Shown: positions 26,420-55,050 of the stretch, in pieces
How positions within the stretch are numbered: position 1 is the first letter of the stretch
Layout of the letters: each line of letters begins with the position of its first letter
Assembly (NCBI RefSeq): GCF_000002075.1
Contig: NW_004797510.1
Location: 182,164 to 245,982 of the forward strand
DNA: 63,819 nucleotides
DNA from: Aplysia californica
Lineage: Eukaryota
Reading direction: 5' to 3'
Program-made: the position numbers and the translations under genes
The notes under the pieces: generated by a model
What the model was told of the DNA's origin: nothing
Seen by the model: only the letters and a program-made list of their open reading frames with translations
Databases searched by the model: none

Positions 26420-26525
26420 TAAGGGATTGGGGTGGGGGGGGGGGCAACAAACTGCCGTCAGATGGGGAGAACTGAAAGGCGACAACAATTCTATATAAAT
26501 CAAGGGATACTTAGACTTAACGCCT
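26420..26525 (+). promoter_or_regulatory. Putative Pol II core promoter of the cysteine-rich secreted protein gene
   Basis: Inverted CCAAT (ATTGG 26426-26430), G/GT box (GGGGTGGGG), TATATAAA at 26492-26499; no ATG between it and the strong-context ACA-ATG-G at 26653. Confidence 0.55.
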
Positions 26526-26652
26526 TAACTCTGAGCTTTTGTGTTGACACCACCGGCTGGTCTGGAGTTTGCGGTGACAGAGAAAGATCTGTTAGTTCAG
26601 ACGGTTTGTATCGCCTTTTGTGGCTAGGATCCTGCGACTCAAAGTTTGCACA

Positions 26653-26682
26653 ATGGAGACACACCTGCCCAATTGGGTGCTG
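26653..26682 (+). CDS. Cys-rich secreted protein, exon 1 coding part (METHLPNWVL), start of signal peptide
   Basis: ATG with A at -3 and G at +4; donor CTG|GTAGGT, phase 0; joined to exon 2 it gives the hydrophobic stretch WVLISLFGCSLLFVAV. Confidence 0.6.
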
Positions 26683-27539
26683 GTAGGTTACTCAGTTACA
26701 TTTTTCTCGCGTTCCCTTCTTATGATCGTTTAATTTATTGGGTCTCCTTCTTTTTACACTTTTACTATTTATTGGTCTTTTCGTCTGTGTACTAGATATA
26801 ATAGTCAAGTTTGTAAATATTTCCAATGATCAAGAGTATTGTTGAGGATACTTGCAGTATTTTTCTCTTTTTTCCTGCTAACAAAATATTTTGATTCTGC
26901 TTTTTTCTGGCGGCTTTTAAAAGTAAATACCATTTGTAAACGATCTCATATGGACCTCTAGGTTCTATTATGAATATTGTCAAGTCTGTAAAGAGATCGC
27001 ATGTTCTGCTTCCGTCTGTTTTTCTTTTTTGTGAGCGTCCAAGAAATAATGAGTACAATGAGATATTTCATTCATATTGGCTCATTCTTTGTACAACAAT
27101 CTGTTCAAATACTCTACCCCTATTAAAACAAGCACTGCTAAGTTGATATAGCTGGTAACAAAAATATTGCCGATGTTTGACGCAGGACATCTCAAAGACT
27201 ACCGAACCGATCACCTTCATATTTTGAGAAGAGCTTAATATCTATCTCATCCACTGGGAAATGCAATCAATTTTCCGAAATTGTGGCTGGTTAATTAATT
27301 ACGATGTATCATTACTAATTCAGTACAAGTGTTACAGTAATCACGAGCTGAAAGTTGGACAAATTGCTAGTTTCTCGGATGTTCATAGGCGTCGCCACTT
27401 TTGAACAAATTTCATAACCATTATCTGAAGCGACATTGATGGTTTCACAGACAGACAGACAAACCTATAGAGAGATAGTGACAGATCTACGGGACACATT
27501 TAAACATATTTTAACACTCACAATTATTCAGAATCAGAT

Positions 27540-28830
27540 GTATCGTCAATCAGGTGGATGACTACACTAGGCTTCTTAGGGAAATTTAATCCATCATTCA
27601 TCCAGTATCTTTCCTCTGTTGCTTTGACATGGCCCTCTCACATTTTGCCAACATTCTCTGGCTATACTTGATAAGGTCTCCTTTGTGTGTCGCTTAACGT
27701 CATAGAGTCTAAATGTTGTATTTGCCAAAGCAACCTTTTTCTTCATCTCAGCCAAGATTACTTCAATAGGGTTAAGCTGGGGGTGGTAAGGAGGGAGCCT
27801 AAGAGGTAAGTGACCATGTTCTTCCAGGTACTTGTGTACTCGAAAAACTTCTATCTTGCTCTGTTTGCTGGTGTTCACAATGTCTAGGAGATCCTTTTTG
27901 GTTTTCGCTGTACTATGGTCGATCCCACGCTTATCAAGCCAGGGTATTATAGGGCCTTTGTTCAAAGATTTCGTTGAAATTTATCATCAGGATTAGTTAC
28001 ATTATGATATGATGCTTTGTCCATAACCAGGCATGATATTTTTTATCTAATGCAGGCACCACAGTGTTACTAATCCAGTTTTCAAAGTCGTTACTATCCA
28101 TGTTTTTGTGATAGTCGCCATTTTCATCTTTCAACTTTGACTCAAAAACCAGTTCCCAATTGTTCACTAGTCCTCTCTCATGGCTTCCGATATGCGCCAT
28201 TCTAAGTTGTTTGCCTTTTCCAGTCGGAATGAATCTCTGTTGCCTGTCAGAGAGCCATTCTTTGGTGCACGTGTGGTGGGCATTGGTGTAGGTCTCATCA
28301 AAAAAATAAATGCCAACGTTGTCTTCTCTAAGCTGTAGTAATTTTGGTAGGTACTTCCCCCTCAGTGCAACCGTGTTCTTTGACTCACAAATTACGTCTT
28401 TGGATGTTTTTGTCTTCTTGAAACTGAAACCTACACTCTTCACAATGCGCCATAAAGTCTGTTTGTTGATATCCAAATCGTGATTGCTTTTCCAAAAAGA
28501 CATAAGTGTCCTAGTGTTCTAAGTGTGACGTACTGGTTATCACCTAATATATTTTCAATAGCGCGTCCCACGAGATCTCTAACAAAGGTATCACATTTCG
28601 GCCTCTCTTAGTCATCTCGACGTCTTCGGTTACATTTTCCTCCGATATCCTTCTGTTCAAAGTCCTGTCACTAAATCAAGCAAATGTTTAGTTCTGCTAA
28701 ATGGATCAGAAATTGAACGATTTGGACGACCGCGATTTTTCTCACAAGTGAAATAGTCATATACTTTCAGAGCAATGTTCTTGTGAGTAAAAAATTTCTG
28801 TTTTATCTTAGACTTCATCTTCATCACAAT
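27540..28830 (-). mobile_element. IS630-Tc1-mariner transposase pseudogene with long DD~85E spacer (Sailor-type), in intron 1
   Basis: FFDETY, PTGKGK.L...H.GS, GDYHKNM...FENW, VMDKASYH (D at 28019-28021), LRLPPYHPQLNPIE (E at 27762-27764); frameshifted. Confidence 0.85.
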
Positions 28831-29649
28831 ATGATATTCAGCAAGTTAACAATTCAAAAATTAAAACCACACAGGCCAAATGGATCACAAAAGCGTAGAC
28901 GCCTATGACTCTTGATTATGACTGACAGATCACAGTTCCGTTCTCTTGTTCATTGGACGGACACATTCGTGTATAACAAAAGTGATTGTTTACTTAGATT
29001 AGCTATAAAAAACAGCAGTTCTGAAAAAACACTACTCACAATTTTCACGACAGTTTTGACAATACACAGAGTCGACAAAGCCGTAACAATGTTTAAATTT
29101 GTCAGAAAAGACAAAAATATTTTATGCTTTCCTCAAACGTTAAAATTGTATTATATCAGGTGCGGGGCGATGATTTTTAAAAATGAGGGGTTCAAAGTTG
29201 GTTTATGATGAATAATGCATATTTGTTTGCTTAAATAATACATCTATGTATAATATTTGTGCTCTGGTTACATTGTCATTCCTAGATACTATATATAATT
29301 ACTAATTCAATACAAGTTTTACAGTAATCGTGTGCTGAAAGTTGGACAAATTGTAAACCTCCTCAATTTTTTTAGATGAACCAACACATTCGGCAACAAT
29401 TTTGTTACAAGCTATAACAGAACATATACCGGTACAGAAAATGACAAGCATTGTAACTGCTGATTGCACTAAGTTAAAAGTAAGCGTTAAATGTTTAATG
29501 TGTCGTTAGACCTTTTTTGTGCGTTCAACGTGTGCACTTCTCTCAAATGCGGTAGGAGGGCTCCTCTTGCATTCTTCGATGTGGATGGGAGATGAAATTA
29601 CTGCCAAGAGTTAGACGGGTTGCACCAGTTGTTATGTTAATCTCTTTAA

Positions 29650-53173: not shown

Positions 53174-53704
53174 GGGGCTCTTGTGGCCTAGAGGTTAAGG
53201 TGTTGGCCTCTCACTCAAAAGGTCCCGGGTTCGAATCCGGGTAGCGACCGAAAAATTTTCTCCTCTAAATTTGTCTCCTTTCACCTCATTTCCTACTCTC
53301 TAGCAATGTTCTGTCGTCTGCTTTCGTCTCCACGTTCTGCCCTCACCTCCTCACCTCCTTTGCCCCTTCCTCTGGGCTCCTGATTCTTTCTTCAGCCTTT
53401 CTACTGCTACTCCTTCGCTTCTTTTTACTGCAGTCTTTCAACCACACAGCTGATCTTCTGGTAGGAAAGATCTACACCTAGCCTTCTCGGACAAGGGCGA
53501 AAATTCTCGGAGAGCATGTGTGCAAGTTGCGCACGTTAAAGATCCCTTGGTGGTCTAAAATCGATAAGAGTAGGCTTCGGCCGCCATCAGGCAAAATTCA
53601 AAATTTCCTACCAACTGAAAATATTAGGTGTGTCCCGCGCGCTCATATGACCTTATGCAGTTGCGAGCGCCGTAAAATACTCTACTATAAAAAATTTAAA
53701 ATAA
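53174..53704 (+). mobile_element. Full-length tRNA-derived SINE with TSD, in the last intron
   Basis: A box TGGCCTAGAGG, B box GGTTCGAATCC, A-rich tail; 12-bp TSD ACTGATTAGAAG at 53162-53173 and 53705-53716. Confidence 0.88.
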
Positions 53705-53974
53705 ACTGATTAGAAGAATGTTTTTGTTCATCGCTTAAAATGATAAGCACTGACTTGACCACCTCATAACATGTAGTGGTGAAAATAAATTCCTGATTAA
53801 ATCTATTTTACTCATACTGCAATATTCGTGAGCTCGTGACTGAGAAAGAGGGGGGGGGGATCGAAGTGACAATGGTGGGACCGAGTATTACTTAAACGTT
53901 TGAGCTATTAACTCCTGGTCAAATTGTTTATAGCTTTGATGACTAAAACAAGTTCTCACAAAATTTGTTTACAG

Positions 53975-54843
53975 GTCAAGTTTGCGAAGTTCTCTACCCC
54001 CCTTGCCCTCCACCAGTTGACTGTGAGGCACTCCGGAGAGAGGATCCTGAGGCACATTGTCCCGAAATCAAATGTGAGCCCATCGCCACCTGCGTTTCTA
54101 CACTAACCTGTGCCAACGTCCGTTGTGAAAAGGGAGCTACGTGTGAGATGTTCAAGCCTCCCTGCCTTGGAGGGCAGTCTTGTGAACCGGCACGACCTGA
54201 ATGTAAATCTGCCTGCAGTAAGGAATGTCGCCCAGGATTCCAATGCGAAAGTCTCCATCCTCCTTGCCCGTTACCAGCCGTGTGCCTGGAAAGTGAATCC
54301 CAAGACTGTGTTTCACCTACGTGTCCCAGCTTCGAAAGATGTGCTGACGTCAGACCAAACTCCTGCGATGACCTGCAGTGTCCTGGCGGGACGGAATGCA
54401 AGATGATCACAGACACTTGCGGTCGTGGTAAGCTCTGTCGTAAGATGGCTAAGGCGGAGTGTGTCCCCGTTTGTAATAAGAAATGTGGACGCAATCGCGA
54501 ATGTAAAATCGCCTCGGAATGTCCGTCTGATGGTAGCAAATGTAAGCACAGGCAGAAGTGTGAGCGTAAACCGGGAGCCTGTCCAAAATGTAAGCCCGGC
54601 AGTGAATGTGCCTTGTCCAAACGATGCCAAGGGTGCAGGAAACGCTATGTCTGCGTACTCAGCCGTGGAACGTGTCCTCCTGTGCCAACAATTAAGCCTT
54701 CCAAACGAGCTTGCAAGAAAGAGAAAAGACGATCCCGTCCGTGTGTCAATGACGACCAATGTAGAAAAAATCAGAAATGCTGTACCTCAAAGTGTGGTCG
54801 CAAGATATGTAGAAAAGCAATGAAGCCTATAGCTCTTCCATAG
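53975..54843 (+). CDS. Terminal exon 11: six Cys modules plus C-terminal WAP (four-disulfide core) domain
   Basis: Open frame of 289 codons including the stop, 46 Cys by manual count; acceptor tttgtttacAG, phase 1; WAP pattern RGTCP...C...C..D.QC...QKCC...CG..IC; TAG at 54841-54843. Confidence 0.92.
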
Positions 54844-54976
54844 TAGTTATTGCGGACTAAACACTTTCTTGTGGGTTATAAGTTTAAGATTTTATTTCGC
54901 TATATTTCATTATATAACGACTGTTGATCATCACCAAAATGAACAACAAAGCTAGGTTCGGGAAATAGTTTTCAGA

Positions 54977-55050
54977 AATAAACTTGGTCTATTGCACGAG
55001 ACAAACAGACTTGAGTACCGTTTGTCTGTCTGGTGTTGTTGTCATGTTGT
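54977..55050 (+). terminator. Polyadenylation signal and downstream GT-rich element
   Basis: AATAAA at 54977-54982, about 135 nt after the stop, then TTTGTCTGTCTGGTGTTGTTGT. Confidence 0.65.

What the first reader, a model, noticed from the sequence alone, without database searches (positions are those of the whole stretch)
26492..54982. Hidden 11-exon gene for a modular secreted protein: signal peptide, 11 Cys modules, lustrin-type repeat, furin site, WAP
Seen: GT-AG exons 26653-26682, 31423-31464, 34343-34414, 38995-39142, 42253-42361, 43390-43483, (47687-47711), 48300-48474, 50062-50311, 51923-52013 and 53975-54843 join in matching phases (0,0,0,1,2,0,1,2,0,1) into one 634-aa frame with about 87 Cys. 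It has a TATA box in front and AATAAA behind, and it is intact while every transposon around it is decayed. Known: lustrin A, an abalone shell-matrix protein, combines CP.G..C..G.CC repeats with a C-terminal WAP domain. Inference: this is a different architecture, with one lustrin repeat among many copies of another Cys module, and is probably an extracellular matrix, adhesive, mucus, egg-mass or defence protein. I cannot assign it to a named gene.
Basis: partly seen in the sequence, partly recalled or inferred. Interest (0 to 1): 0.8.

Follow-up and report, generated by a model that had tools for sequence, protein, structure and literature searches.

The report
Sea-hare cysteine-rich WAP protein gene

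Summary
They match, exon by exon and junction by junction, the NCBI model of a neighbouring paralog on the same Aplysia californica scaffold (XP_005100260.1, 643 aa). They also match two partial database models of this locus: XP_005100261.3 for the 3' half and UniParc UPI00065B6947 for the 5' half.

Exon 3 and the 25-base exon 7 have no counterpart in any relative. Where exon 7 sits, every well-assembled paralog has a WAP-coding exon (phase 0 to 1). That exon is absent from the assembled letters of intron 6, which holds three assembly gaps. The claim of an intact 634-aa frame is therefore unproven.

- **Domains:** Pfam confirms the C-terminal WAP domain. The lustrin repeat stays below threshold.
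- **Cys modules:** The many Cys modules fit C-X(2-4)-C-X5-C-X(5-10)-C. Their only solved-structure relative is the chicken eggshell-membrane protein CREMP (E 9e-6).
- **Processing site:** An RKKR site is conserved across paralogs.
- **Distribution:** The C-terminal half was found only in Aplysia. The N-terminal cassette also occurs in other heterobranch snails.
- **Expression:** I obtained no RNA evidence, and no family member has been characterised.

Most likely this is a furin-processed, disulfide-rich extracellular coat or defence protein. Interest is modest.

The parts
26492..26499 (+). TATA box (TATATAAA), about 155 bases before the ATG
   Evidence: The 12-base core CTATATAAATCA is identical in the promoter of the neighbouring paralog.
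26653..26682 (+). Exon 1 coding part, METHLPNWVL (start of signal peptide)
   Evidence: The paralog has MGTHLPIWAL at the aligned place with the same GTAGGT donor. P0005, P0006 and P0008 begin the same way.
29680..29718 (+). Alternative first coding exon (MEKTHLLKTKNSK) used by the older database model P0011
   Evidence: It has no counterpart in paralogs, so it is less well supported than exon 1.
31423..31464 (+). Exon 2, ISLFGCSLLFVAVH (hydrophobic core of signal peptide)
   Evidence: 14 of 14 residues are identical in the paralog (two copies there), with only synonymous changes. It is present in P0011 and P0055.
34343..34414 (+).
   Evidence: All relatives and P0011 splice exon 2 directly to exon 4. 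Its only other copy in the genome is an inverted duplicate at window 12901-12972, where the exon is 71% identical in protein and the surrounding 265 bases are 81% identical in DNA, and one Cys is lost. Its length of 72 bases (phase 0 to 0) means its inclusion cannot be judged from the frame.
38995..39142 (+). Exon 4, 6-Cys module
   Evidence: 59% identical to the paralog exon and 46% to the C17 paralog. It is joined to exon 2 and exon 5 in P0011.
42253..42361 (+). Exon 5, first half of the lustrin-like 6-Cys domain
   Evidence: 76% identical to the paralog, dN/dS 0.15.
43390..43483 (+). Exon 6, second half of the lustrin-like domain, ending in KPGLCPM (the opening of a WAP domain)
   Evidence: Pfam Lustrin_cystein gives 15.5 bits, below the cut-off. 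In paralogs KPGxCP continues into the WAP exon.
43484..48299 (+). Intron 6 with three assembly gaps (45435-45566, 45965-46097, 48111-48250). The internal WAP exon expected here (about 46 codons + 1 base, phase 0 to 1) is not in the assembled letters.
   Evidence: The paralogs' WAP exon lies about 720-780 bases before their exon 8. There is no tblastn or blastn match in the window. DNA homology with the paralog resumes at 48252, right after the last gap. No contig of three DNA runs bridges the gaps.
47687..47711 (+).
   Evidence: No counterpart anywhere. It is one of 248 candidates that would restore the frame, and one of two with good splice sites.
48300..48474 (+). Exon 8, 9-Cys module
   Evidence: 86% identical to the paralog, dN/dS 0.20. 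It starts in phase 1, as after the paralogs' WAP exon.
50062..50311 (+). Exon 9. The NCBI model XP_005100261.3 starts at the Met at 50075. The conserved RKKR site is at 50210-50221.
51923..52013 (+). Exon 10
   Evidence: Junctions 9-10 and 10-11 are exactly as in P0001. 83% identical to the paralog.
53975..54843 (+). Exon 11, 289 codons with 46 Cys, about nine C-X(2-4)-C-X5-C-X(5-10)-C modules and a strongly basic tail; stop at 54841-54843
54664..54816 (+). C-terminal WAP four-disulfide-core domain (residues 230-280 of exon 11)
   Evidence: Pfam PF00095, 27.9 bits against a cut-off of 20.8, E 2.8e-6. Eight Cys are present.
54977..54982 (+). AATAAA polyadenylation signal, 134 bases after the stop

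Best explanation
Window 26.5-55 kb (Aplysia californica scaffold C240, + strand) holds one protein-coding gene. It belongs to a family of about ten Aplysia paralogs, three or four of them on this scaffold, that encode secreted proteins of about 640-700 aa with about 14% Cys. The family plan, read from the neighbouring paralog XP_005100260.1, is: signal peptide (exons 1-2), a 6-Cys module (exon 4), a lustrin-like 6-Cys domain (exons 5-6), an internal WAP domain (its own exon), a 9-Cys module (exon 8), a linker with a conserved RKKR convertase site (exon 9), about eleven C-X(2-4)-C-X5-C-X(5-10)-C modules (exons 9-11), and a very basic tail ending in a second WAP domain. Exon 3 is most likely not an exon. 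Exon 7 is a chance filler at the place of the internal WAP exon, which either lies in an assembly gap of intron 6 or has been lost. Shown: gene structure, family membership, the WAP domain, module periodicity, conservation of RKKR, and purifying selection (dN/dS 0.43). Inferred: the product enters the secretory pathway. A furin-like convertase cuts it after RKKR into a mildly acidic N-terminal part and a C-terminal part with a strongly cationic tail. The parts serve outside the cell as a disulfide-stabilised coat or matrix component (egg-cordon or capsule, mucus or shell-associated), with WAP domains acting as protease-inhibitor or antimicrobial modules.
For: Exon boundaries, phases and open frames. 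The organism and the 3' model P0001 with junctions 9-10-11. The 5' model P0011 with junctions 2-4-5-6. Paralogs carrying both halves in one protein. Collinear exon matches in paralog loci on C240, C17 and C549. DNA collinearity, including promoter and TATA box. dN/dS 0.43 with all Cys kept. WAP domain. RKKR is kept in the five aligned family members that have this region, and P0007 has RRRKR there. The distant relative P0010 has RHKR and RRRR in front of the same DP[YL]C motif. Net charge is +32 over the last 144 residues, against -1 to -3 for each of the exons I accept upstream of exon 11. Module count is 11 against 2.2 in shuffles. The only solved-structure hit of exon 11 is the chicken eggshell-membrane protein CREMP, E 8.9e-6. 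CREMP and slime-mould spore-coat proteins are disulfide-rich structural coat proteins (PMC3068167, PMC12723725).
Against: I obtained no RNA evidence. The one polyA RNA run laid had no read on exons 6-8, and the three other runs proved to be DNA. The internal WAP exon is missing from the assembled letters, so the frame between exons 6 and 8 is open only through an unsupported mini-exon. The function rests on domain analogy alone. The CREMP match is a 16-25-residue motif summed over repeats, and structure comparison gave nothing. The AlphaFold model is of middling confidence (pLDDT 65). No signal-peptide predictor was available.
Confidence: 0.7

Rival explanations
1. One reading: 11 exons including exon 3 and the 25-base exon 7, giving an intact 634-aa protein with a single WAP domain. 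This paralog would have replaced its internal WAP exon by a mini-exon.
For: All sites and phases fit. Exon 7 is one of only two candidates in intron 6 with a pyrimidine-rich acceptor and a good donor.
Against: No relative has either exon. There are 248 frame-restoring candidates by chance. The duplicate of exon 3 shows no coding constraint. Exon 6 ends with the opening KPGLCPM of a WAP domain, which would be left headless.
Confidence: 0.08
2. The locus is a decaying copy. The internal WAP exon and part of intron 6 were deleted, which breaks the frame between exons 6 and 8. At most the 3' half (the NCBI model from the Met in exon 9) or the 5' half is still made.
For: No WAP exon, and none of the paralog's 730-base intron between WAP exon and exon 8, is found in the assembled window. 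The gaps are estimated at only 132-140 letters. Databases split the locus in two. No reads fell on exons 6-8 in one polyA run.
Against: All nine supported exons are open with intact splice sites and every Cys kept, at dN/dS 0.43. Homology with the paralog runs right up to the edge of gap 48111-48250, beside a (CT)n microsatellite where assemblies break. The C17 paralog also has a gap exactly there (1132 N), and its model lacks the WAP exon too. This points to an assembly problem rather than biology.
Confidence: 0.17
3. Two separate genes lie here, as the databases have it: a 165-aa secreted protein (exons 1'-2-4-5-6) and a 398-aa protein without signal peptide (exons 9-11).
For: Models P0011 and P0001.
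Against: P0011 ends by reading through the exon 6 donor into the intron. P0001 starts inside a Cys module and has no signal peptide, although it is full of disulfide domains. Exon 8 would belong to neither gene, yet it is 86% conserved. Paralogs join both halves.
Confidence: 0.05
4. Same gene, different role. It could be a soluble humoral defence factor: a cationic, crustin-like antimicrobial or protease inhibitor released by furin cleavage. Or it could be a shell-matrix protein of the lustrin A type, rather than a structural coat component.
For: The tail of the C-terminal part is very cationic and ends in WAP. WAP relatives among solved structures are elafin, SLPI and omwaprin. A lustrin-like Cys pattern and a proline-rich insert occur in paralog P0005.
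Against: Crustins are small, with one Cys-rich region before the WAP domain (own knowledge). Lustrin_cystein is not met, there is no Gly/Ser-rich domain, and only one lustrin-like unit is present. There are no tissue data either way.
Confidence: 0.3

Closest known systems
Aplysia californica XP_005100260.1 / XP_012938991.1 ('keratin-associated protein 10-4 / 10-6', isoforms X1/X2; P0055/P0004), about 48 kb away on the same scaffold, opposite strand
   Same: It has the same exon order and phases for exons 1, 2, 4, 5, 6, 8, 9, 10 and 11. Protein identity per exon is 59-100% (84% in exon 11). The TATA box, the RKKR site, every Cys and the C-terminal WAP are conserved.
   Different: It has an internal WAP exon between exons 6 and 8, and nothing like exons 3 or 7. 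It is itself uncharacterised, and its name is an automatic one taken from Cys-rich composition.
Other Aplysia paralogs (XP_005100258.1 'LTBP4', XP_005106735.1 'zonadhesin-like', XP_005090533.1 'prespore protein Dp87-like', XP_012935185.1 and XP_035828698.1 'spore coat protein SP60') and heterobranch relatives in Physella, Biomphalaria, Bulinus and Bradybaena
   Same: Aplysia paralogs share the whole plan. The snail proteins share the N-terminal cassette (6-Cys module, lustrin-like domain, WAP, exon-8 module) at 34-42% identity.
   Different: The snail proteins continue into EGF or further WAP domains. The C-terminal half was found only in Aplysia: among 1.84 billion representatives, only family members matched it, and four of the six (P0001, P0002, P0003, P0007) carry Aplysia californica names.
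Lustrin A of abalone nacre (Shen et al. 1997, J Biol Chem; from my own knowledge, not tested here)
   Same: Both are secreted, modular and Cys-rich, with a C..C..CPxGxxC..CC unit, a basic region and a C-terminal WAP-like domain. Paralog P0005 even has a proline-rich insert.
   Different: This gene has one lustrin-like unit instead of about ten, and it stays below the Pfam threshold. It has no Gly/Ser-rich domain, different main Cys modules and a furin site. It is not a member by the tests run.
CREMP (chicken cysteine-rich eggshell membrane protein, PDB 9pgb) and Dictyostelium spore-coat proteins SP60/SP75 (C4C modules: C-X4-C-X5-C-X6-10-C)
   Same: The Cys spacing is the same in five modules. 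There is a shared core motif: window SCDDLQCPGGTECKMI against CREMP SCSDIHCPKGTTCKMI, phmmer E 8.9e-6 (module definition from PMC3068167). Both are tandem two-disulfide modules in extracellular proteins.
   Different: CREMP runs for over 2000 residues of near-identical modules and has no WAP domain, lustrin-like domain or furin site (PMC12723725). Here the modules vary (X2-4 in the first loop) and number about a dozen. Disulfide pairing was not tested, and fold comparison was not significant.
WAP four-disulfide-core proteins (elafin, SLPI, omwaprin; crustins of crustaceans)
   Same: The WAP domain is above the Pfam threshold. The paralogs' internal WAP matches elafin at E 2e-5. The cationic Cys-rich region before a C-terminal WAP recalls crustins (own knowledge).
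   Different: This protein is much larger and multi-modular. The C-terminal WAP has long basic loops (KKEKRRSRP) between its first cysteines. No activity has been tested.

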